64,000 nt of DNA, taken from Antechinus flavipes. Taxonomy: Eukaryota. The stretch covers positions 84,940,001 through 85,004,000 of the forward strand of contig NC_067404.1 in NCBI RefSeq assembly GCF_016432865.1, in the 5' to 3' direction. A program made the translations under genes and the position numbers. Of the stretch, positions 18,935-63,350 are shown piece by piece; position 1 is the stretch's first letter, and every line of letters starts with the position of its first letter. The notes beneath the pieces were generated by a model. The model saw only the letters and a program-made list of their open reading frames with translations, was not told where the DNA came from and searched no databases.

Positions 18935-19769
18935 TTTCTTTCCATTCCATTCTTTTCTTTTCTGTTCCTTTCCCTTCCTTTCTATTCTATTCCATTCCTT
19001 TCCATTCCATTGATTCCATTCTGTTCTTTTCCATTTCCTTCCGTTCCAGTTTTTTGTGTTCCATTCCATTCTGTTCTTTTCCATTTCCTTCTGTTCCAGT
19101 TTTTTGTGTTCCATTTCATTCCATTCTGTTCCTTTCCATTCCATTTTGTTTTTTCTCATTCCTTTCTGTTCTGTTCTATTCCATTCCTTTCTGTTCCATT
19201 CTTTTTCATTCCATTCCATTCTGGTCCTTTCCATTCCATTCCTTCCCATTCCTTTCTGTTCTATTCCATCCCATTTTCTTCTTTCCCATTCCTTTCTGTT
19301 CTATTCCTTTCCATTTTCTTCTTTCCCATTCCTTTCTGTTCTATTCCATTCCATTTTCTTCTTTCCCATTCCTTTCTGTTCTATTCCATCCCATTTTCTT
19401 CTTTCCCATTCCTTTCTGTTCTGTTCTATTCCATTCCTTTCTGTTCCATTCTTTTTCATTCCATTCCATTCTGTTCCTTTCCATTTCATTCCTTTCTGTT
19501 CTGTTCCATTTTATTCCGTTCTTTTCCATTCCTTTCTGTTCTGTTCTTTTCCTTTCCATTCCATTCCGTTGCTTTTCATTCCATTCCTTTTCATTCTGTT
19601 CCATTCCTTTCTTTTCTTTCCCTTCCTTTCTTTCGATTTGATTCCTTTTCTTCCCATTCCTTTTCTATTGTCCATTCATTTCCTCTCCTCTTTTTCTTTT
19701 CTCCTCTCCTTTCCTTTTTCCTTTCTCCCCTCCTTTTTCCTTTTTCTTCTCTCCTTTTTCCTTTCCTTC
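18935..19769. repeat. Complex pentameric (TTCCA/TTCTG/TTCCT) polypyrimidine microsatellite in MBD1 intron 1
   Basis: Direct reading; 40-bp and ~250-bp internal periodicity. Confidence 0.95.
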
Positions 19770-20611
19770 ACCAAGTACCCTTGGCACACTCATTCCCTAT
19801 TGAGTTTGAGAGGCAGACCTGGGTTTATCCAATGTCTGGACTAGCTGGTCCTTTAGCCTTGAACTACTGCCTTCTTCTTTGGCCTCAGTTTCCCCCATTT
19901 TATACAATTCTCACTGAGACTGTGATTCTAGGCAAGCTGGGTTTGCCTTCCATTCATTGGACCCTTCTCCCAGGAAGATCTTGGTCTTTATTTAAAAGTT
20001 GAAGGTTCGAACAAGCCCCAGCAGGGCTTCTTTGTTAGTTTCTGCATGGGCAGTTGACCACAGGGAACAGAGAAACAGGATGTGGTTGCCCAGGCATCCT
20101 AGTACGGGGGTCTTGGCATGTGGTAAGCAGGACACAGCTTCCCGCTCGGCTCGGTGCAGGAAGTTTGGGGTCCTGCTGGACGTTTCAAAATCTGGGGCCT
20201 CTACAGACTCTTGGTAGTTTCAAAGTCTTGTTAATCCCAACCAGTGGTTGGAGAGCACTCTTCCCTGGGAGGAGACAGGCGTTATCTCATTTGGTAAATA
20301 TCTTGCCATCCCCCTTCTCTGACCACCCAGGTCCCTGATGCTGTGCGGTTCCATCTGCTTTGAGGACAGTAAAGCCCCTTCCTTAGAGAAATGGCCTCTT
20401 GGCGGTTCTTACTGATCAAACCTGCAACTCCACTGCAGGGTGGGGGGGGCAGGCCTATGCCTGGAGTGTGTAGCCTCCGGTTTGCCTCTTCCTTTGGCCT
20501 GCTGACCTGCCCTGCCTGGGCTCCCTGCACCCCACTGACCTGCCCCCCCCCCCTGCAGGCGGCCACCTCTGGCGCCCATCACTCTCTCCCCTCCCCTGAC
20601 CCCCGTCCTCC

Positions 20612-48869: not shown

Positions 48870-49189
48870 GCGCGCGCTTTTCCTTTTTCCAAATACATGC
48901 ATAGTTTGCAGCATACATCTTTGCAAAACCTTGTGTTCTAAATTTTTCTCCCTCCCTCCCCGCCCTTTCCTCCTGCCCCTTCCCTCACACAGCAAGCAAT
49001 CTGTGTTGCACAAGAAAAATCAGATCGAAAGGGAGCCCCCACACACACTTTGGTGGATGTTTTGCGCGGGTTCTTTTGGCGGAGCGGGGATGGGGGGTGG
49101 GGGTTAGGCAGGTAAGGCTTATGTAAGGGGGGGGGGCGGGGCGGGATGACGGCACGTCCCAGGAAGCCTCCTGCTCAGGAGGAGCTGGG

Positions 49190-50270
49190 AGCTGGGCCTT
49201 GAAGGAAGCCAGCAAGGAGGAGGTGACCGGGCCGCCGTGGGGAGGAAGGGGCCGGGGCAGAGACAGCCTGTGGCCGCCTTGGGCTCGAACCTTGAAGCCT
49301 TCCCCTTGGGAGCCTGAGCCAGCCTTGGTTGGAGACTTATTTTCAAGCGGCAGTTAGCCAGGGGATCACTAGATGGCACTATCGGCTAAAAAATCAGATC
49401 AGCAAACCGTCTCGCTCAGTTCCCCCGCCCCTTTCTCCTTTTGTTCCTTCGGGAGGTAGCTGGACGCTCAGGCGCAGGCTCCCGCCAAGCGGGGCAAAAA
49501 GGGGAGGGGGGAGCTAGGGGCGTGGCAGTCGGAAGCCTCGCTTACCCCGGGCTGGGCGGGAAGGGGCGGAGGCCGACGGCGGGCCCTGGGCGGTTAGAGG
49601 ACTCCTCTTGCCTGTGGCTTCCCCTGCCCTCCCCTGCGCTGGGGCCGGCTCCTGGTAAGACGGGACGGGTGGGGGGGAAGTGGTGGCGGGGATGGAGGGG
49701 GGGAAGGGAGGTGGCAGGTGCGGCTGGGGAAAGAAAACCGGGTTGTGAGGGGGTTACTATAAAGCTTAGCTCCGCGCCTCCCCTTTTGTCTCCCTTCCCC
49801 CCGCAGCCCTTCCATGTCCCGTGGGCTCTCGGGGTCGGGCCTGGGCCTTGAGGAGTCGGGGTTAAGGCGGGGTATCGGGTCCGGTTCAGGGAGGGGTAGG
49901 CCTCGTGTATTCTAAGCCGGGCCCGTGGCGTCAGGCCCAGGATGGGGCGGGGCCTCCTGAGGAAGCCCCGTGGTCCCGCCGGGTGCGGTCCCGCCGAGTG
50001 CAGTCCCTCTGCGTGTCCTGCCTCGGGCTCTTTCCCCCGGGCTCTTGCTATCGCTCCCTGCATTCTGAAGCTTTCTCGAATGACTCCAGCCGCCATTTGC
50101 CCGTGGGGTCACTTTCTCGTCACTTTGCAGACTTTGAGGTCCTTAGTGTTTCTCTGCCCCTCCCCCTTTGCACTGGCCCATGTGGAGGCAGAGGGAGCTA
50201 TGATTCTCAAAGGGGCCCAACCAGACGTTTATTTCTGGATCTCCTCAAGGGAGTGATGGGGGCGACTGGG
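49190..50270. promoter_or_regulatory. Orphan CpG island / probable bidirectional promoter
   Basis: GC- and CpG-rich with many G-runs; strong donors on both strands (minus GGG|GTAAGC at 49546, plus CTG|GTAAGA after 49654); no recognisable CDS. Confidence 0.6.
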
Positions 50271-50546: not shown

Positions 50547-53500
50547 CTTTAAAATCTCATTGATTTCGTTGCTTCAGTGTGGAGAATCTGACACTCCTCC
50601 CCCCCATTCTCCTTCCCCCTCCCTCTTCATAACTGCAGACACCTGGGGTGGCCAAAGCCAGAGATGGAAATGGGTCTGTGACGGACAGGACAGACTGTGG
50701 ACTGCCTCCTCGGGACTGTAAGTAGAGGGTGCCCCCTGGCTCTGTTTCCATGGGGATGGGGGGAGAGAAAAAGTAAGATGGAAAGTTTCTTGCACTAGGA
50801 GGGGGTGATTTCTCAACCCGTGACCCAACTGCAAGGAGAACACATACTTGGGCTCCATCTGTTTAGGAGTGAGACAGATCCCCCTAAAGCTTGCCGTGTG
50901 TATTGTGGTAGGCACTGAGAGGGATGCAAAGGTGGCCATGTGGTGTCCTGGCAGAGTGTGCCAGTTACTTGGAATAAGGAGATTTGGGCATTTGAGTCCT
51001 AGTTTTAGGAAACTCTGGGTGAACTTAATTTTCTGGAAGATGGAAGTAGGGATGCCTTGAAGGCAGCTACCAGAGAGGGGCAAGGAAGGAAGCATTCCCG
51101 GGTTCAGAAGTGAATGAGCCAAGGTAGAGAGCTTTGGAGGTCTTCCCAGAGCCTGTCAGCTTGGTAGGGATATAAACAAAGAACATTGAGCTTGTTCTTA
51201 GCATTGGCCCATGCTGAGGCGTAGCAAACTATGGGCAAGTCCCGAATTCGTGCTTAGCCAGCTCTGCTACTAGAAGCATGGGGGGTGGGGGGGAGAATCC
51301 CATGGTGGGGAATCCCATGGAGGTGCTTCCATTTTCTCCTAACACTGTGCTATCCATTTGGTCAGCAGCAGCTCAGAATTCAGAGTTCTCCGGGCTGCAG
51401 AGACAATGGTTCTGGGAACCTCTAAGGAGATTTTTCTTGGGCTCGAGATGGACCAGGAATGTTTGTGGTAGATATCTCCAACACATAGAAAATGAAAAGC
51501 ATCCCTGGGATAGATAATGTATGTATGTGAGAGAGAGAGAGAGAGAGAGAGATTAGTGAGGGAACGCCCTCTTCCAAGAAGTTGGTATCATCTCTGCAAC
51601 TTTCCAGACTCAGTTGTCTCAGGTACAGAAAGAGCAAGTCAGAATCACCTAGTAGATGTGTCTCTGAGGTAAGGCTTGAACCCAGGGCTTCCTGGCTTTT
51701 TGTTTATTACCCTTTCTACTGGTAAACCTCATGTGATAGCAGTAGTGGCCAGGGTGAGGGGAGGGACACCTGAGCCTGCTGGTAGTATGAACCGGCCCCC
51801 GTCTTTTGGTAGTGTTTATGGAGACCAGCCTGGTAGCCTGCCTAGATCCTTGTGCTGGTGAAAGCATTAAAAATCAGGACAAAAGCTTGTTTTGCTGCAT
51901 TAGGAAATTTATTGCCATACTTTTTAAGTGTCTGATAAAAACAAAAACAATGAATTTAATAATGTAATTCAGTTAAACAGGCATCTCTTACACATATTCA
52001 GTGCCAACTTTTAGAGCTACAAAGACAAAAAGGGAAGGCTAATACTCTTCCAGAAGCTTCTATTCCACGGGGCCAACCTGTGGAATATCACTGTCACAGA
52101 CTCCTCATGCTGCCAGAAAGAATGACCCAGAGAGAAGCTGAGTTTTACAAGACTGATACTTAATAGATGTGGCCAGAGGGTATCGGTAGTTGGGTCGGCC
52201 AGTAGCAGTAAGAGATGGTAAGCCAGCCAGGCCTTCTGGTCCTGTTGTGGGAGCTGTAGCTCTTTTGGAAACTGATCCACGAGGGCCACTGGGATCCGAA
52301 GGCTTTGCAAAGTGTACTCCCGGCTCTGTTTTTTGGGTTGTTTCTAAAAAGAAAAAAAGAAAAAGTGAGTGCTTGATCCCAGCCTCTGGAAAGAGACGAG
52401 AGTTCTCTTTAAACTCTTTATTGCCCCAACATTATAAAGTTTAACATGAATAGGTTTTGACCAGGGAACCAGTCATAGGGTTTTAGAGCTATGAGAAACA
52501 TGAGAAGCATGTTTTTCAGGTGAAGAAACCAAGTTCCAGAGATAGGAAACAATTGAGGTAGCACAGGTAATACTCTGGGTCAGTAATTCTAGCGGCTAAA
52601 GAAGGCAACTTGATCTTGGCTGTACAAACTAAAAGAGGAAAAAAGCCTTCCCTTCCATCAACACTTACCTGTCCTTCAGTGGCCCCCCGGGTTCATGATG
52701 GTATACCCCCTCCAGTGGGACACAGTTCAACTTCCCACACCTTATTCTTTTGGAGGATTCTGGTCCATGTCTGCCCTTAAAATAAAAACCACACGTAGTT
52801 CCAAATGGGGAAGATAATCTCTTCCATTCAGATCAGCCCTGGTTCTACTATCTCATTAGAATCTTAATTAACTAATGAAAGGAAGCCCCAGGTGGTACCT
52901 GTGATTTCAGTGACATAAAACTGTGAACTTCCAAACCTTTATTGATAATTTTGCTCTGTTTCCATGGTTATTTCTATATCACAGAGAATAAGGGGCACCC
53001 TGGGGTCAAAAGATGTATGTCTGGATCTCAGTGACTGGGATGATGGAGCAAATCTTTTCTCTGGATTTACTTCCTCACCTGTATATTGGGCATAAGGATG
53101 GGGGAATGGTAGACTAGGTGCCCCATAGGATTCCTTCCAGATCTATGTTTTTTGACAAAAGGCAATCACTCACACCTTCCTCAGGTCCCATCTGAGATCC
53201 GATGTTCAGTTCTCATTCAGCACTGCATTTTGGGAAGAATGGCTAGTCCCTTAGGATGGAGATAAAACTTGAAATCTTCTTAGTGAAAGCAAAGGTAGTT
53301 GAGGACGTTTCACGAAGAGGTAAGATGATTTGAGGAAGATGTAATTTCTGTCTTTAGACAGAGATAGAGGCAGAGACTGCAAAAAAGAAAAAAACACAGT
53401 GAGATACAAGGTAAAGGCCACAAAAAGACACAAAATATAGGAGGCAGACGCTATAAACCACCCCCCTCCTCCCAAAACACAACAAAAAGAAAAGACAAAA

Positions 53501-53589
53501 AGCTGTAAACAAGATTGCAGACAAAGGTCGTATCTCCTTCCCCAAAGGACCTCTCCTTTGGGCCACAGGCAGTAAAATTCCCAAAAGCC

Positions 53590-56500
53590 CAGACAGAGGA
53601 ACAGGTGATATCTCCTGTACCTCCGTCTGGGTTATTGGGGAAATATTTCCCAAAAAACAAAATGGTGATACAGGCGGTATTTCCCAAAAGGCCAGTCGGA
53701 GGCACAGGTGTTATTTCCAAATAACCCAGACAGACACACGTGATATTTCCCAGAAGGCCAGATGGAGGCATAGGCGATATTTCCCCCAAACAAAATGGAG
53801 GTACAGGCGGTATTTCCCAGAAGGCCAGATGGAGGCACAGGCGATATTTCCCAAAAGCCCATTCGGAGGCACAGGTAATATTTCCCCAAAAGGCCAGATG
53901 GAGGCACAGGTGATATTTCCCCGAAAACAAAATGGAGGCACAGGTGATATTTCCCAAAAGCCCATTCGGAGGCACAGGTGAGATTTCCCCCAAAACAAAA
54001 TGGAGGCACAGGTGATATTTCCCCAAAAGGCCAGATGGAGGCACAGGCGATATTTCCCAAAAGCCCATTCAAAGGCACAGGTGATATTTCCCCAAAAGGC
54101 CAGACGGAGGCAAGGTGATATTTTCCCAAAAGGCCCGACAGGCGCACAGGTGATATTTCCCAAAAGCCCATTCGGAGGCACAGGTGATATTTCCCCCAAA
54201 ACAAAATAGAGGCACAGGTGATAGTTCCCAAAAAACCAGACAGAGGCACAGGCAATATTTCCCCAAAAGGCCAGACGGAAGCATGGTGATATTTCCCCAG
54301 TAACCCAGATGGAGGCACAGGCGATATTTCCCCAAAAGACCAGATGGAGGCACAGGCGATATTTCCCCAAAAGGCCAGACGGAGGCAAGGTGATATTTTC
54401 CCAAAAGGCCAGACAGGCGCACAGGTGATATTTCCCAAAAGCCCATTCGGAGGCACAGGTGATATTTCCCCCAAAACAAAATGGAGGCACAGGTGATATT
54501 TCCCAAAAGACCAGACAGAGGCACAGGCAATATTTCCCCAAAAGGCCAGACGGAGGCAAGGTGATATTTTCCCAAAAGCCCATTCGGAGGCACAGGTGAT
54601 ATTTCCCAAAAGCCCATTCGGAGGCACAGGTGATATTTCCCAAAAGACCAGACAGAGGCACAGGCGATATTTCCCCAAAAGACCAGACGGAGGCACAGGC
54701 GATATTTCCCCAATAACCCAGATGGAGGCACAGGTGATATTTCCCAAAAGCCCATTCGGAGGCACAGGCGATATTTCCCCAAAAGACCAGATGGAGGCAC
54801 AGGCGATATTTCCCCAAAAGACCAGATGGAGGCACAGGTGATATTTCCCCAAAAGGCCAGACGGAGGCAAGGTGATATTTTCCCAAAAGCCCATTCGGAG
54901 GCACAGGTGATATTTCCCAAAAGCCCATTCGGAGGCACAGGTGATATTTCCCAAAAGACCAGACAGAGGCACAGGCGATATTTCCCCAAAAGACCAGACG
55001 GAGGCACAGGCGATATTTCCCCAATAACCCAGATGGAGGCACAGGTGATATTTCCCAAAAGCCCATTCGGAGGCACAGGCGATATTTCCCCAAAAGACCA
55101 GATGGAGGCACAGGCGATATTTCCCCAAAAGACCAGATGGAGGCACAGGTGATATTTCCCCAAAAGGCCAGACGGAGGCAAGGTGATATTTTCCCAAAAG
55201 GCCAGACAGGCGCACAGGTGATATTTCCCAAAAGCCCATTCGGAGGCACAGGTGATATTTCCCCCAAAACAAAATGGAGGCACAGGTGATATTTCCCAAA
55301 AGACCAGACAGAGGCACAGGCGATATTTCCCCAAAAGGCCAGATGGAGGCACAGGCGATATTTCCCCAAAAGACCAGATGGAGGCACAGGCGATATTTCC
55401 CCAATAACCCAGATGGAGGCACAGGTGATATTTCCCAAAAGCCCATTCGGAGGCACAGGCGATATTTCCCCAAAAGGCCAGACGGAGGCACAGGCGATAT
55501 TTCCCCAAAAGGCCAGACGGAGGCACAGGCGATATTTCCCCAAAAGGCCAGACGGAGGCACAGGCGATATTTCCCCAAAAGACCAGATGGAGGCATGGTG
55601 ATATTTCCCCAATAACCCAGATGGAGGCACAGGCGATATTTCCCAAAAGCCCATTTGTAGGCACAGGCGATACTTCCCCAAAAACAAAATGGAGGCACAG
55701 GCGATATTTCCCCAAAAGGCCAGACGGAGGCATGGTGCTTTTTCCCTAATAACCCAGATGGAGGCACAGGTGATATTTCCCAAAAAGCCAGGTGGAGGCA
55801 CAGGCGATATTTCCCCAAAAGGCCAGATGGATGCACGGGTGATATTTCCCCAATAACCCAGACATCAGCATAGGTGAAATTTCCCAAAAGCCCATTCGGA
55901 AGCACAGGTGATATTTCCCCCAAAATAAAATGGAGGCACAGGCGATATTTCCCCAATAACCCAGATGGAGGCACAGGTGATATTTCCCAAAAGCCCATTC
56001 GGAGGCACAGGAGATATTTCCCCCAAATAAAATGGAGGCACAGGTGATATTTCCCAAAAGGCCAGATGGAGGCACAGGTGATATTTCCCAAAAAGCCAGG
56101 TGGAGGCACAGGCGATATTTCCCCAAAAGGCCAGATGGATGCACGGGTGATATTTCCCCAATAACCCAGACATCAGCATAGGTGAAATTTCCCAAAAGCC
56201 CATTCGGAAGCACAGGTGATATTTCCCCCAAAATAAAATGGAGGCACAGGCGATATTTCCCCAATAACCCAGATGGAGGCACAGGTGATATTTCCCAAAA
56301 GCCCATTCGGAGGCACAGGAGATATTTCCCCCAAATAAAATGGAGGCACAGGTGATATTTCCCAAAAGGCCAGATGGAGGCACAGGTGATATTTCCCAAA
56401 AAGCCAGGTGAAGGCACGGTGATATTTCCCCAATAACCCAGATGGAGGCACAGGCAATATTTCCCAAAAGGCCAGACGGAGGCACAGGCGATATTTCCCA

Positions 56501-57160
56501 AAAAGCCAGGTGGAGGCACGGTGATATTTCCCCAATAACCCAGATGGAGGCACAGGCAATATTTCCCAAAAGGCCAGGTGGAGGCATGGTGATATTTCCC
56601 AAAAAGCCAGGTGGAGGCATGGTGATATTTCCCCAATAACCCAGACGGAGGCACAGGCAATATTTCCCAAAAGGCCAGACGGAGGCACAGGTGATATTTC
56701 CCAAAAGGCCAGGTGGAGGCGCAGGTGATATTTCCCAAAAAGCCAGGTGGAGGCACAGGTGATATTTCCCAAAAGACCAGGTGGAGGTACAGGTGATATT
56801 TCCCAAAAGACCAGGTGGAGGCACAGGTGATATTGCCCCCAAACAAAATGGAGGCATAGGTGATATTTCTCCCAAAGGCCAGACGGAGACAAGGTGATAT
56901 TTCCCTAAAAACAGAATGGAGGTGCAGGTGATATTTCCCAAAAGACCAAGTGGAGGCACGATGATATTTCCCCAATAACCCAGACGGAGGCACAGGCGAG
57001 ATTTCCCAAAAGACCGGGTGATATTTCCCAAAAGACCAGACAGAGGCCCAGGTGATATTTCCCAAAAGGCCAGATGGAGGCACAGGTGATATTTCCCAAA
57101 AAACAAAATGGAGGCACAGGTGGTATTTCCCAGAAGGCTAGATGGAGGCACAGACAATAT
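53590..57160. repeat. Minisatellite block A: ~100 copies of a 33-36-bp unit GGCACAGG(T/C)GATATTTCCC(C)AA plus a variable 11-13-nt part
   Basis: Direct reading; variable parts AAGGCCAGAYGGA, AAGCCCATTCGGA, AACAAAATGGA, TAACCCAGATGGA, AAGACCAGAYRGA, AAAGCCAGGTGGA. Confidence 0.97.
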
Positions 57161-57934
57161 TTCCTAATAGCTCAGAAGAAGACTAAGGTGAGAATTCCCA
57201 AAAAGAGAAGAAGTTTAAGTTGTATCTCCCCACAGGCTCCCCCTCCCCAAAAGGTGTTGCAAGCATCATATTTCCCCCCAAAAAGCCAGAAATACAGGCT
57301 TTTTCTCCCCAAACATGGAGAGACTCAGTCTGTACCACCCCGAGGATGGAGAGATTCAGACTGTAGCTCTGTCAAAATGGCTCCAGTTGGAGCACAGGTT
57401 GTACCTTTCCCAAAACAGAAAGGCACAAGCTAGAGCTTCCAAAAGACCTCCATAGACAGGCTCCAATTCTCCACAAGGAGACAGACACACAAGCTGAAGC
57501 TCCCCAAAGATAGCTCCAGATACAGGAACAAGCTGTAATCCCCACTAGGTAATGATTGCCCAAAAACGATGTAGCCACTCGTGGAAATTCCTAAAAGGAG
57601 ACATAGACACAGAGGGGCATTTTTAAAAGGAGACAGCCACAGCTGGACTTCTCCAGAGGCAAAAATGCAACTTGTACCTCCTTTGGGCAGAGGAGGCCCA
57701 GGATGCATCTTTCCAAAGATGAAGGATCAGTCTGTAACCCCCCAAAAGAAGCTGGCACAGGCTGTATTCCTCCTCCCCCCAAGTACAGCTTGTGCCTTCT
57801 TAAAAGTGGGAGACTCAGGCTTTAACTTTCCAAAAGGAGACTGGTATAAGTGGTAACAGCCTAAAGGCAAGGAGACTAAAGCTATTATTCCCCCCACTCC
57901 CCCCAAAAAGATGACTTCAGATAGAAGCACAAAA

Positions 57935-58880
57935 TAATTCCCCAAAGGGGATGCAGGCTCTGGTGGTAATTCCCAAAAGGCAATGCAGGCACTGGTGGTG
58001 AAATTCCCAAAAGATAATGCAGGCACTGGTGGTAATTCCCAAAAGGCGATGCAGGCTCTGGTGGTTAAATTCCCCAAAGGTGATATAGGCACTGGTGGTA
58101 ATTCCCAAAAGGCGATGCAGGCTCTGGTGGTTAAATTCCCCAAAGGTGATATAGGCACTGGTGGTAATTCCCAAAAGGCGAGGCAGGCCCTGGTGGTGAA
58201 ATTCCCAAAAGATAATGCAGGCACTGGTGGTGAAATTCCCAAAAGATAATGCAGGCACTGATGGTAATTCCCAAAAGGCAATGCAGGCACTGGTGGTGAA
58301 ATTCCCAAAAGATAATGCAAGCACTGATGGTAATTCCCAAAAGGCAATGCAGGCACTGGTGGTAATACCCAAAAGGCGAGGCAGGCTCTGGTGGTTAAAT
58401 TCCCCAAAGGTGATATAGGCACTGGTGGTAATTCCCAAAAGGCGAGGCAGGCACTGGTGGTGAAATTCCCAAAAGATAATGCAAGCACTGATGGTAATTC
58501 CCAAAAGGCAATGCAGGCACTGGTGGTAATTCCCAAAAGGCGAGGCAGGCTCTGGTGGTTAAATTCCCCAAAGGTGATATAGGCACTGATGGTAATTCCC
58601 AAAAGGCGATGCAGGCACTGGTGGTGAAATTCCCAAAAGGCAATGAAAGCTCTGGTGGTTAAATTTCCCAAAGGCAATGAAAGCTCTGGTGGTTAAATTT
58701 CCCAAAGGCAATGAAAGCTCTGGTGGTTAAATTTCCCAAAGGCAATGCAGGCACTGGTGGTGAAATTCCCAAAAGGCAATGCAGGCACTGGTGGTGAAAT
58801 TCCCAAAAGGCAATGCAGGCTCTGGTGGTGAAATTCCCAAAAGATAATGCAGGCACCGGTGGTAATTCCCAAAAGGCAAC
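57935..58880. repeat. Minisatellite block B: ~28 copies of related 32/34-bp units (ATGCAGGCACTGGTGGT(GA)AATTCCCAAAAG...)
   Basis: Direct reading; alternating monomers give a 66-bp dimer. Confidence 0.95.
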
Positions 58881-61800
58881 AAATATACAACCTATATCTC
58901 CACCTAAGGCACAAGCAGTGGCTCCTCTCAAACCAAGATGGAGGGAGAAGCACTATTTCCAAATGCATGTGTAGGCCCAGTGGTAGTAATTTCCAAAAGT
59001 GAGAATGGAGCCATAGGCAATAGTTCTCAGAAGGGCACAGAGGCACAGGCTGTAATTTCCAAAGAGGCAGAAGCATGGAGATTGATTTCCCAAATGAAAA
59101 ATGGAGGCACAAATAGGTGATTCCTCAAATAAAAAATGGAGGCGTGGAGAGGTAATTCTCAAAATGAGGTACAAGCACAAATGATAATTTCCCAAATAAA
59201 AGATGGAGTGATCAGTGACAATTCCCCAGATGAACAAATGGAATCATGGGTGGTGATTCCCCAAATGAAGTGGAGGTACATGTGCCAATTTTCCAAATGA
59301 AAAACAGCTCTGACTAGCGCTCCCCCAAAGGTGGCTCCAGATTCTAGAGGCACAGGCTGTAACTCCCCACAGACCCAGGCCATAAGCCTTTGTGCCTTCA
59401 ATGGCAACAAGAGGCCCAACTGTAACTCCCTCCCCCCAAGGACCAATACGCAGGCTGTGGCTCCCTCCAAAAAGATGGAGGCACAGGCCGGAGCTCCCCA
59501 AAGATGGCTCCACGTGCAGGCACAGGTGGTAATTCCTTAAAGGAAGTGGCAAGACAGCTGGTAATTCCCAGAGATGGCTCCAGATTCTGGAGGCACAGGC
59601 TGTAATTCCTCAAAGATGGTTCCAGATGGAGACCCAGACCATAAACCTCCATGCCTTCAATGGCAACAAGAGGCTCAATTGTAGCTCCCCTCCCCCCAAG
59701 GACCAATACACAGGCTAGTGCTCCCCAAAGATGGCTCCACATGCAGGCATAGGTAGTAATTCCCAAAGGAGGCAGCCTCAGAGGTGGTCATTCCCAGAAG
59801 GCGATGCAGGCATAGGTGATGATTCCTGCAAGATGGCCCCAATGGTAGAGGCTGGCTTCTCAAATGACTCCAGATGCATTCCCAGGCCACAAACCTTCCT
59901 GCCCTCGATGGCAACAAGAAGCCCAATTGTAGCTCTTAGCTCCCCTCCCCCCAAGGACCAATATAAAGGCAGCATCTCCCTTTGAAAAAAGAGAGGCACA
60001 GAGGCACAGGCTGTAGCTCCCCAAAGATGGTTCCAGATACAGCCACAGGTGGTTATTCCCAAAGAAGGGAGCAGCAGAGGTGGTAATTCCCAGTAGGCAA
60101 TGCAGGTACAGGTAGTAATTCCCAAAGGATACCTCCAGATGGCAGGCGCAGGATGGTAATTCCCAGAAAGCAACAGACATACAGCCCATCTCCCCATAAT
60201 GGGAGGCACAGGCTGTATGTATCTTCCCCCAAAAAACAAGATGAAGGCACAGGTAGAAATTCCCAAAAAGCCACGATGGAGACACAGGCTGTAATTTCCA
60301 AAAGGTGGCAGACGCCTAGAGATTGATTCCAGAAATGAAAATGGAGGCTCAAATAGGTGATTCTTCAAATAAAAAATGGAGGCATGGAGAAGCAATTCTC
60401 AAAATGAGGTACAAGCACAAATGGCAATTCCCCAAATAAAAGATGGAACAATGAGTGGCAATTCCCCAGATGGAATCATGGGTGGTGATTCCCCAAATGA
60501 GGTGGAGGTCCATGTGGCAATTTTCCAAATGAAAAATGGCTCTCACTGAACTCCCAAAACTGGCTCCAGGTGAAGGTAGACTCATTTCCAAATGCTAGAG
60601 GCACAGGCTGTAGCTCCCCAAAGATGGCTCCAGATGACAACCAGGCCATAAACTTCAAAGGCCACAGAGAGTTTAGCTCTCCCCCCCCAAGGACCAATAT
60701 AGGATGTGACTCCCTTTAAAAAATGGAAGCCCAGGCTGTAGCTCCCCCAAAATAGCTCCAGATGCAGATCAAACTAGTAATTCCCCAAAAGCCTGTAATA
60801 CATGTGGCTAATTGCCTGAAGGTAAGTGGACATATAGCCTGTAGCTCTTCCCAGACCAACATGGAGGTACAAGTGATGATTCCTAAGAAACGAGATGGAG
60901 GCAATGATGGAAATTCCCAAAATGATATATGGGCATAGATAGTAATTTCCAAAAGCCACGGAGAGTAATTCCCAAAAACTCGAGGCAGAGGCTGTCATTT
61001 CCAAAAGGAGACATTAGTGTGGACAGCAATTCCCAAATGAAAACTGGAGGTACAAATAGGTGATTCCTCAAATAAAGGATGGAGTCGTGGAGAGGTAATT
61101 CTCAAAACGAGGTACAAGCACAAATGGTAATTCTCTAAATGGCATGGGGGGACGAGGAGTGGGCTTCCCCAAATAAAAGATGGAATGACTAGTGGTGATT
61201 CCCCAGATGAACAGATGGAATTATGGGTAGTGATTCCCCAAATGAAGTGGAGGTCCATGTGGCAATTTTCCAAATGAAAAACGGCTACTAGAGCTCCCCA
61301 AAGCTGGCTCCAGGTGAAGGCAGACTCCTTTCCAGATGCTAGAGGCACAGGCTGGTGCTCCCCCAAAGGTGGCTCCAGATGGACACCCAGGGCACATAGA
61401 TTTCCTTGCCCTCAAAAGCCACAGAGGCTCAAACTATAGCTCCCCTCCCCCGAAGGACCAATGCACAGGCTGTAGCCTCCTCTGCCAAGATGGAAGCACA
61501 GGCTAGAACTCCCCAAAGACAGCTCCACATTCAGGGGATAGGTGGTAATTCCCAAAGGTGGTTTCAGACTCTAGAGGCACAGGCTACAGCTCCCCAAATG
61601 ACTCCAGATGCAAGTCCAAGCCATAAAACCACCCAGGCCTCTGGCCACAGAAGCTCAAGACTACATTTTCTTCCCCCTAAGGACCAATATACAAGCTGTA
61701 AACTCCCTTTCAAAACTGGAGGCACAGGCTGCAGCTCCCCCAAAATTGCTTCAGATGCAAGCACGGGTGGAAACTCCCAAAAGGAGGTGGCAAATTCTCA

Positions 61801-62820
61801 AGGAGATTGATTCCAGAAATGAAAATGGAGCACAAATAGATGATTCCTCAAATAAGAAATGGAGGCATGGAGAGGTCATTCTCAAAATGAGGTACAAGCA
61901 CAAATGGCAATTCCCCAAATAAAAGATGGAACAATGGGTGGTGATTCCCCAAATGAAGTGGAGGTCCATGTGGCAATTTTCCAAATGAAACTGCCTCTTA
62001 CTGGAGCTCCCCAAAGTTGGTTCCAGGTGAAGGCACTCATTTCCAAATGCTAGAGGCACAGGCTGTAGCTCCCCAAAGATGGCTCCAGACGCACACCCAG
62101 GCCATAGAGATTTCCTTGCCCTCGATGGCAACAAGAGGCCCAATTGTAGTTTCCCACCCCCCAAGAACCAATACACAGGCTGTGGCTCCCTAAAAAGATG
62201 GAGGCACAGGCTGGTGCTCCCCAAAGATGGCTCCACGTGCAGGCACAGGTGGTAATTCCCAAGGAAGTGGCAACAGGTAATTCCCAAAAAGCAATTTAGG
62301 CCCAAGCATTAATTCCCAGAAGGTGGCTCCAGGTGCAGGCTCAGAAAGTAATTAGCAAAGACATACACCACAGATCTCCATGTGATGGGATGCATAAGTG
62401 GTGGGATGCACAAGTGGTAGCTCTTCAAAACCAAGATGCAGCAGGCACAGGTAGGATTCCCCAAAGGTCCGGTAGACTCGGCCTGCAAAAAGAAGACAGA
62501 AACATGTGCAGTGATTCCCCACGTGAAAAACCGAGACATGATTTCCCCAATTAAAAGATGGAGGCATGGAGAGGCAAAAGCACAATGTTCCCCAAACAAG
62601 TGTATACTGACCCGAGCGTACAGACGGAGTCGGGGGAAGACAGGCAAGTGGTGACCTCCTCAAATGAAGGCTGACTCCAGGTGAAGGCAGATTTTGATTT
62701 GCACATGCCAGAGGCACAGCCTGGAGCTATCCCAAGATGGCTTCAGATGGGGACCCAGGCCATAAACCTCCCTACCCCCCAAGGCAGTAGAGGCCTGACT
62801 GTGACTCACCTCCCCTCCCC
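58880..62820. repeat. Degenerate block C: diverged units of the same family in ~0.7-1.2-kb higher-order repeats
   Basis: Landmark AAATGAAAA(C)TGGAG..C/TACAAATAG.TGATTC.TCAAATAA recurs at ~59090, ~60330, ~61035, ~61815. Confidence 0.85.
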
Positions 62821-63287
62821 CTAAGGACAAAGGCTAGAATTGCTCCAAATACTGGACCAGACTTCCCAAACAAAAAATGGCTCTAGATGGGGGGGGGGGG
62901 GGGGGAGAGGGGGGGGCAGGGAAGCTGTACCTCCCAGAACAAGGAAACAGCAGATCACGAGAAGCTGCACGTGTGACCCCGTGGCTTGTGGTGTAGGCAG
63001 ATGCTCCATGTTCAGAAATTGATGCGAGGAGGCCGCCTACTGGGAGGGTGCTCTTTGTGACCTCAGTGGACCATTCTGGTTTTTCATCTGGTACCTTGTT
63101 TGGGTTACACAGCCAGATGGACATCATTCTTTTAATTGTTAAGTATACAATTGTGAATGAGAAAGAGTCAGAGAAACTCGGCATACCAAGGAGCCTTCGG
63201 CAAAAGGCCCTGCTGATCAGTGCAATGGGGTGGCGGGCAGTCTCTTCCTTTCCTGCAAAGAAAAATGGCCTCAAAACTTTAATCTTC

Positions 63288-63350
63288 TCTACCTGTGTGA
63301 CTCTGGGCAAGTCATTTAACCCCAGTTGCCTCAGCAAAAACAAAACACAC
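63288..63350 (+). mobile_element. 5'-truncated WSINE1
   Basis: TGTGTGACTCTGGGCAAGTCATTTAACCCCAGTTGCCTCAGCAAAAACAAAA. Confidence 0.75.

What the first reader, a model, noticed from the sequence alone, without database searches (positions are those of the whole stretch)
53590..62820. 9.2-kb polarised, hierarchical 32-36-bp repeat array with constant and variable modules
Seen: every unit has a constant core (GGCACAGG..GATATTTCCCAA in block A; GGCACTGGTGGTAATTCCCAAAAG in block B) and one of about six recurring variable cassettes. Homogeneity falls from block A to B to the degenerate block C, all on one strand orientation. The core carries CAGGTG (E-box), TGATA and TTCCCA motifs ~100 times. Inference: an actively evolving interstitial satellite expanding from an older unit, with potential as a high-density protein-binding platform in DNA or RNA, near a CpG island and gene cluster rather than an obvious centromere.
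Basis: partly seen in the sequence, partly recalled or inferred. Interest (0 to 1): 0.72.

Follow-up and report, generated by a model that had tools for sequence, protein, structure and literature searches.

The report
Large complex minisatellite beside GRM6
This is a real 9-kb non-coding stretch built from one ~34-letter unit copied about 155 times beside a marsupial's GRM6-like gene; it is still changing and may be copied into RNA, but it looks like an ordinary large minisatellite.

Summary
The array is real. About 155 head-to-tail units of one ancestral 32-36-bp motif fill 53.4-62.8 kb, and the window has none elsewhere.

- Block A (53670-57203): about 100 units with a constant core and six recurring cassettes.
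- Block B (57935-58879): 28 units arranged as a 66-bp dimer.
- Block C (58880-62830): old and degenerate, with four 0.5-0.6-kb macro-units 73-83% alike.

B is as homogeneous as A. One unit at the left edge (53608-53646) is inverted. CAGGTG and TGATA occur about 60 times, not 100.

Two 9-unit duplications are 100% identical, so turnover is recent. The unit length breaks the reading frame, so it is not coding. It has no Pfam or Rfam match, no stable RNA fold and no flanking LTR or TIR. It lies in an autosomal-type CXXC1-MBD1-GRM6 neighbourhood, so it is not Rsx.

Public runs of six coded organisms hold parts of it. These include transcriptome-sized runs and two recorded RNA-seq runs, so transcription is likely.

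Best reading: a single-locus complex minisatellite, probably carried inside a non-coding transcript. No look-alike on other DNA was found in the scan's notes. Another reader noted this same stretch as a putative minus-strand lncRNA.

The parts
53360..53669 (+). Degenerate A-rich left edge of the array; the first recognisable units start at about 53563.
   Evidence: Sequence read; profile hits in the 53-kb bin.
53608..53646 (-). Single inverted unit. Two small palindromic junctions flank it (GATATC-type and AAATATTT-type).
   Evidence: Inverted-repeat pairs I1-I25, 85-92% complementary to many block A units; nhmmer minus-strand hit with E = 1e-8.
53670..57203 (+). Block A: about 100 units of 34/35 bp. 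Consensus is TTCCCAAAAGGCCAGATGGAGGCACAGGTGATAT, with a constant core and six cassette classes.
   Evidence: TRF score 3688; unit census; consensus; identity to consensus a flat 0.85-0.90.
54530..55200 (+). Very recent 9-unit (311-bp) duplication; 360 bp are identical at lag 311.
   Evidence: Lag scan, 100% identity.
55754..56410 (+). Second very recent 9-unit (308-bp) duplication; 349 bp are identical at lag 308.
   Evidence: Lag scan, 100% identity.
57204..57934 (+). Spacer of strongly degenerate units between blocks A and B.
   Evidence: Sequence read; 6-8 weak profile hits; no TRF array.
57935..58879 (+). Block B: 28 units alternating 32 and 34 bp (a 66-bp dimer), with a 164-bp higher-order period. 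Consensus is TTCCCAAAAGGCAATGCAGGCACTGGTGGTAAA.
   Evidence: TRF 84-86% matches; spacing list; consensus; 193 bp at 98.4% identity at lag 164.
58880..62830 (+). Block C: old degenerate units organised in four macro-units starting near 59040, 60279, 60982 and 61799 (73-83% alike). It also has ~240-bp sub-repeats. The stretch 60023-60305 resembles block B units.
   Evidence: Repeat families D1-D16; self-BLAST.
62889..62916 (+). G17-AGAG-G7 tract just past the right edge of the array.
   Evidence: Sequence read.
62802..62810 (-). Consensus-like minus-strand 5' splice site (GAG|GTGAGT) at the right edge of the array. Signal only, not shown to be used.
   Evidence: Pattern scan.
53376..53395 (-). 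Strong minus-strand acceptor-like site (GTTTTTTTCTTTTTTGCAG|T) at the left edge of the array. Signal only; T-rich tracts are expected here from the base composition.
   Evidence: Pattern scan.
51890..52669 (-). Minus-strand signals downstream of the array: donor CAG|GTAAGT at 52669, acceptor at 52343, and AATAAA at about 51913 followed by a U-rich stretch. Inferred only.

Best explanation
This is a single-locus, non-coding complex minisatellite (a VNTR-type tandem array) about 11 kb downstream of a GRM6-like gene.

One ancestral unit of about 34-36 bp was amplified long ago by replication slippage and unequal exchange. It formed an array with 0.5-1.2-kb higher-order units; block C is that array, now 17-27% diverged between macro-units. 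Two unit variants were later re-amplified into the homogeneous sub-arrays A and B. The array is still turning over in blocks of nine units.

CpG positions in the unit decay to TpG and CpA, as in germline-methylated DNA, and the variants spread by amplification.

The array is probably transcribed passively, as part of an exon or an intron of a long non-coding transcript. Nothing shows that the repeats have been selected for a function.

Shown: the anatomy, the lack of coding capacity, the common origin of the blocks and the recent duplications. Inferred: the mechanism of growth, the methylation, the transcription and the neutrality.
For: - Array anatomy and statistics.
- A and B consensus units are about 80% alike and share TTCCCAAAAGGC...GGCAC. 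Part of block C (60023-60305) aligns to B units at 67-74%, and the C macro-units are 73-83% alike.
- 360-bp and 349-bp internal duplications are 100% identical at lags 311 and 308.
- Not coding. Unit lengths of 34 and 35 bp are mixed irregularly. All three minus-strand frames are open only because the unit lacks TTA, CTA and TCA. The array ORFs have no Pfam family, and a block C ORF had no protein relative.
- No Rfam family matches. No RNA fold is better than shuffles on either strand, z +0.03 to +2.4.
- No LTR, TIR or direct repeat flanks the array, and the other 54 kb hold no further copy.
- CG/TG/CA counts are 27/41/5 at one unit site and 15/34/6 at another.
- Setting: a GC-rich, gene-dense region with CXXC1-like, MBD1-like, ABT1-like and GRM6-like genes. 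Minisatellites are typically found in such regions (my own knowledge).
Against: - The run table suggests the stretch is well represented in transcriptome-sized data sets of several organisms. That fits a real RNA gene as well as passive transcription.
- The array has persisted long enough for its macro-units to diverge by about 20%, and parts of the stretch are held by six coded organisms. That could reflect constraint.
- Copy number elsewhere in the genome could not be measured, so 'single locus' is shown only for this window.
Confidence: 0.58

Rival explanations
1. The array is the repeat domain of an autosomal long non-coding RNA, built like Xist, Rsx or Firre. About 155 copies of a short unstructured motif would act as a multivalent platform for RNA-binding proteins. 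On a + strand RNA the sites would be C-patches (UUCCCCAAAAG) of the kind bound by hnRNPK and PCBP. On a minus-strand RNA they would be U-tract and G-run sites (CCUUUUGGGGAAAU).
For: -: transcriptome-sized runs X3 and X4 of organism A (about 100 million letters) hold 0.63/0.62 of the words, against 0.78/0.67 for the genome-sized runs. X8 of organism B holds 0.46 against 0.50. Two recorded RNA-seq runs of organism F (X15, X18) hold 0.08 against 0.09 for its DNA run.
- Either strand is predicted to be unstructured. That is compatible with, but does not show, an accessible single-stranded platform.
- Consensus-grade minus-strand splice and poly(A) signals surround the array.
- The putative flanking exons have no coding capacity.
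- Rsx shows that marsupial lncRNAs can consist mostly of kb-scale tandem repeats (PMC6633197).
Against: - The kind of runs X3, X4 and X8 is unknown ('?').
- The best minus-strand donor (62810) and acceptor (53376) bracket the array, which would make it an intron.
- Blocks A and B are young and fast-evolving. No conservation of motifs was shown.
- Motif density follows trivially from repetition.
Confidence: 0.22
2. The unit, or the whole 9-kb block, belongs to a high-copy family: a dispersed or multi-locus satellite, or the internal tandem-repeat region of a transposable element. Small data sets would then hold it because of its copy number, not because it is expressed.
For: Small runs hold most of the words. 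That is also expected if they are low-coverage DNA in which only repeats assemble.
Against: - No LTR, TIR or flanking direct repeats.
- No other unit in the remaining 54 kb of the window.
- To reach 63% of the words, the unique-looking degenerate block C would also have to be multi-copy.
Confidence: 0.12
3. The size of the array is partly an assembly artefact. The 100%-identical 9-unit duplications would be mis-assembled expansions.
For: Two perfect duplications of 349-360 bp are the kind of feature that assemblers can create in tandem arrays.
Against: - Independent genome-sized runs of the same coded organism hold 0.67-0.78 of the sampled words, so the sequence content is real.
- Duplications of this kind are also the normal mode of growth of a minisatellite.
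- The window has no N.
Confidence: 0.06

Closest known systems
Mammalian minisatellites / VNTR arrays (complex, higher-order)
   Same: - Unit of 32-36 bp in a head-to-tail array of kb scale.
- Strand asymmetry: the + strand has A 0.32-0.33 and T 0.17-0.21.
- Variant units interspersed in recurring order.
- Growth by multi-unit duplications.
- Position in a GC-rich, gene-dense, non-centromeric region.
   Different: - At 9.2 kb it is at the large end of the range.
- It has three age layers, including 0.5-1.2-kb macro-units.
- Length polymorphism, the property that defines a VNTR, could not be tested.
Rsx (marsupial X-inactivation lncRNA) and Xist repeat domains
   Same: Kb-scale tandem repeats of short motifs in a marsupial genome; the + strand carries C-patches; probably transcribed; either strand is predicted to be unstructured.
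   Different: - The locus lies in a CXXC1-MBD1-GRM6 neighbourhood, which is autosomal in human (from memory), not on the X.
- No sequence comparison with Rsx was possible, because the paper gives no repeat sequence in its text.
- No evidence of nuclear retention or of any function.
Classical satellite DNA with higher-order repeats
   Same: Hierarchical organisation: units, then 9-unit blocks, then macro-units. Local homogenisation.
   Different: The array spans kilobases rather than megabases, sits among genes, and appears at one locus in this window. Copy number across the genome is untested.
Macrosatellites such as DXZ4, D4Z4 and the Firre repeats
   Same: Block C has four macro-units of 0.5-1.2 kb near CpG islands. 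The array may lie inside a non-coding transcript.
   Different: The macro-units are few, diverged and themselves made of 35-bp units. A by-eye comparison with the CTCF core motif, recalled from memory, gave only about 11 of 14 positions, so I make no CTCF claim.

Membership tests
Minisatellite / VNTR | Unit of about 10-100 bp repeated head to tail | tested here: met
   Units are 32-36 bp. About 155 lie on one strand.
Minisatellite / VNTR | Array of about 0.5-30 kb at a discrete, non-centromeric locus | tested here: met
   The array spans 53.4-62.8 kb, with genes and CpG islands within 4-20 kb. No units occur elsewhere in the window.
Minisatellite / VNTR | Length and unit-order polymorphism between individuals | not testable with these tools
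   Only indirect evidence: two 100%-identical multi-unit duplications, and 0.67-0.78 rather than about 1.0 word share in runs of the same coded organism.
Satellite DNA (high-copy, multi-locus) | Very many copies, or many loci, in the genome | not testable with these tools
   No genome-wide search of this animal is on hand. The scan's notes gave no look-alike.
Rsx | X-linked locus in marsupials | tested here: not met
   The window carries CXXC1-like, MBD1-like, ABT1-like and GRM6-like genes. Their human counterparts are autosomal (my own knowledge).
Repeat-domain lncRNA (Xist / Rsx / Firre-like) | The array is part of a mature, abundant RNA | tested here: inconclusive
   The run table suggests RNA-type data sets hold most of the stretch.
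Repeat-domain lncRNA (Xist / Rsx / Firre-like) | Repeat motifs conserved between distant species | not tested
   Only shares of 31-letter words in coded organisms are known: 0.50, 0.20, 0.10, 0.09 and 0.08. Which parts are shared is unknown.
Coding tandem repeat (repeat protein exon) | Period a multiple of three, with one maintained frame | tested here: not met
   34- and 35-bp units are mixed irregularly. The long minus-strand ORFs mix all three frames of the unit. No Pfam match and no protein relatives.
Transposable element with internal tandem repeats | Terminal repeats (LTR or TIR) or other element parts flanking the array | tested here: not met
   BLAST of the left flank against the right flank, and of the array against the rest of the window, found nothing. 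No repeat library was on hand, so origin from a TE fragment is not excluded.

The most novel reading that the evidence does not exclude
The array is the body of an undescribed autosomal marsupial lncRNA, shared by several species and broadly expressed. Its 150-odd unstructured short repeats would act as a multivalent protein-binding scaffold, an autosomal counterpart of the Rsx/Xist repeat-domain design, sitting next to the chromatin-reader genes CXXC1 and MBD1.
Probability: 0.2. Interest if true: 0.6.

Novelty: new member of a known kind. Interest (0 to 1): 0.3.

Why it matters
As a minisatellite it is ordinary. It could serve as a highly variable marker for the species and as a clear example of layered array evolution: an old higher-order core, two younger re-amplifications and duplications of zero age. 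It would matter more if the probable transcription proves to be a mature, repeat-dominated RNA shared between marsupials. That would add an autosomal case to the few lncRNAs made almost wholly of tandem repeats, and it would be directly testable by stranded RNA-seq, RNA FISH and CLIP.

Tried and rejected
- **Rsx itself.** Rejected on gene neighbourhood. The Rsx paper gives no repeat sequence to compare.
- **Coding repeat.** Rejected on period and frame mixing. A protein word search with a block C ORF found nothing.
- **Structured RNA.** Rfam found nothing in 1-63291. Folds of four-unit pieces on both strands are no better than shuffles.
- **Transposable element.** No flanking repeats.
- **Copies elsewhere.** A metagenome scan with the 19-nt core gave 22 single chance matches and no arrays. 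The scan's own notes gave nothing by words or by sequence.
- **Read evidence.** The strand, ends and splicing of any RNA therefore stay unknown.
  - Local scripts read the window file only as a target for pattern or profile scans. Searches stopped at 63291.
- **Literature.** A search for a repeat-rich autosomal marsupial lncRNA found nothing relevant.
- **Strand from sequence signals.** Splice and poly(A) signals give no decision on strand, or on exon versus intron.
Full report
**1. Observation**

The array exists where stated.
- Tandem Repeats Finder reports a 34/69-bp array at 53670-57012 (97.6 copies, 81% matches, score 3688). It reports a 33/66/164-bp array at 57936-58879 (28.5 copies, 84-86% matches). 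Further right it finds only short weak arrays.
- The core GGCACAGGYGATATTTCCC matches 85 times with up to two mismatches, always on the + strand. None is expected from 100 shuffles.
- A profile built from the units finds about 155 units on the + strand between 53.3 and 62.9 kb, and nothing significant in the other 54 kb.
- Block A has 100 units with 61 distinct sequences. They share a constant core and carry one of six recurring cassettes.

**2. Corrections to the observation**

- Block B is not less homogeneous than block A. Units are 0.85-0.90 identical to the A consensus, flat along the block, and 0.88-0.91 identical to the B consensus. Only block C is degenerate.
- One unit at the left edge (53608-53646) is inverted, so orientation is not strictly uniform.
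- CAGGTG occurs 61 times, TGATA 65 times and TTCCCA 95 times in 53590-62820, with no occurrence on the other strand.
- Degenerate A-rich units begin a little left of the stated start.

**3. Anatomy and history**

- The consensus units of A (TTCCCAAAAGGCCAGATGGAGGCACAGGTGATAT) and B (TTCCCAAAAGGCAATGCAGGCACTGGTGGTAAA) are about 80% alike, so they have one origin.
- Block C consists of the same kind of unit, much decayed. It has four macro-units starting near 59040, 60279, 60982 and 61799 that are 73-83% alike, plus ~240-bp sub-repeats. One part (60023-60305) resembles block B units.
- Block C is therefore the old core, and A and B are later re-amplifications of single unit variants.
- Growth is still going on, or stopped very recently. 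A stretch of 360 bp is repeated at lag 311 and one of 349 bp at lag 308, both at 100% identity. Further copies stand at 99.2% (lag 793) and, in block B, 98.4% (lag 164).
- At two to three positions the units vary as CG/TG/CA: 27/41/5 at one site and 15/34/6 at another. This is the usual trace of methylated CpG decay. The counts reflect amplification of variants, not independent mutations.

**4. What it is not**

- *Not coding.* Units of 34 and 35 bp follow each other irregularly. The long minus-strand ORFs (up to 825 aa) exist in all three frames only because the unit lacks TTA, CTA and TCA, and they mix the three readings of the unit. They match no Pfam family. A block C ORF found no protein relative.
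- *Not a known RNA family*.
- *Not a structured RNA.* Four-unit pieces of either strand fold no better than shuffles, z +0.03 to +2.4.
- *No sign of a transposable element.* No flanking repeat pair was found.
- *Not Rsx, which I considered first.* The window carries CXXC1-like (11.4-16 kb), MBD1-like (20-28.6 kb), ABT1-like (31-32.3 kb, minus strand) and GRM6-like (35.2-42.7 kb) genes. Rsx is X-linked (PMC6633197).

**5. Transcription**

The run table is the only outside evidence.

| Coded organism | Genome-sized runs | Small or RNA runs |
|---|---|---|
| A | 0.78, 0.67 | X3 0.63, X4 0.62 (about 100 million letters each, transcriptome-sized) |
| B | about 0.50 | X8 0.46 (203 million letters) |
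| F | 0.09 | X15, X18 0.08 (recorded as RNA-seq); four further small runs 0.08 |

- The simplest reading is that most of the stretch is present in RNA.
- The weaknesses: the kind of X3, X4 and X8 is unknown, all runs are kept as contigs, and low-coverage DNA of a high-copy repeat would look the same.
Strand, ends, splicing and level are therefore unknown. I worked beside those places afterwards.

**6. Sequence signals**

- On the minus strand there is an acceptor-like site at 63251 (my reading of the sequence; the scan stopped at 63291 and did not list it). One search found a donor GAG|GTGAGT at 62810, a strong acceptor at 53376 and donors at 53079 and 52669 (CAG|GTAAGT). It also found an acceptor at 52343. 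An AATAAA lies near 51913 with a U-rich stretch after it.
- These signals allow two models: a giant exon that contains the array, or an intron (62809-53377) that is the array.
- T-rich tracts on the minus strand follow from the A-rich + strand, so the acceptors carry little weight.
- The putative flanking exons are full of stops.
- The + strand carries 13 AATAAA inside the array and 40 weak CAGGTGAT donor-like sites.
- The strand cannot be decided from sequence.

**7. Verdict**

- The best-supported reading (0.58) is a large, layered, still-active minisatellite at a single locus, probably carried along in a non-coding transcript and without shown function.
- The main rival (0.22) is that the array is the working body of an autosomal repeat-domain lncRNA.
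- A high-copy family (0.12) and an inflated assembly (0.06) remain possible.
- The kind is known, so the novelty is that of a new member. Interest is modest unless the RNA reading is confirmed.
- The scan's notes show no look-alike on other DNA.

Noticed in passing
window:18938-19768: A 0.7-kb pyrimidine-strand array of (TTCCA)n-derived units with 40-120-bp higher-order periods, between the CXXC1-like and MBD1-like genes. It resembles the (GGAAT)n motif of human satellite II/III. The 1-kb window 19001-20000 has GC skew -0.58 and AT skew -0.64.
   Followed up: no
window:31000-32300 (minus strand): An ABT1-like gene (peptides [11 protein letters not shown]..., [13 protein letters not shown]...) lies between the MBD1-like and GRM6-like genes. 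From memory, this gene order differs from the human one, where the three genes are on different chromosomes. I named ABT1 by eye, not by a family scan.
   Followed up: partly
window:44500-45500 and 49000-50000: Two CpG islands (CpG observed/expected 0.56-0.88, GC 0.61-0.70) lie between the 3' end of the GRM6-like gene and the array. I saw no obvious coding exon there. They could be promoters of unannotated transcripts. 49111 carries a + strand CAG|GTAAGG donor.
   Followed up: partly
window:62889-62916: A G17-AGAG-G7 tract sits directly at the right edge of the array. It could form a G-quadruplex or mark a slippage-prone boundary.
   Followed up: no
window:53600-53650: The inverted unit is joined to its neighbours through two short palindromes: ...GGTGATATCTCC... 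and ...GGGGAAATATTTCCC... This suggests a small inversion mediated by the ATAT centre of the unit.
   Followed up: partly
window:63292-63327: The reads tool's filter would not lay these places. The tool itself says the filter also trips by chance. I left them out of all later searches. The surrounding sequence (about 63290-63350) looks like a marsupial SINE fragment; I judged this by eye only.
   Followed up: no
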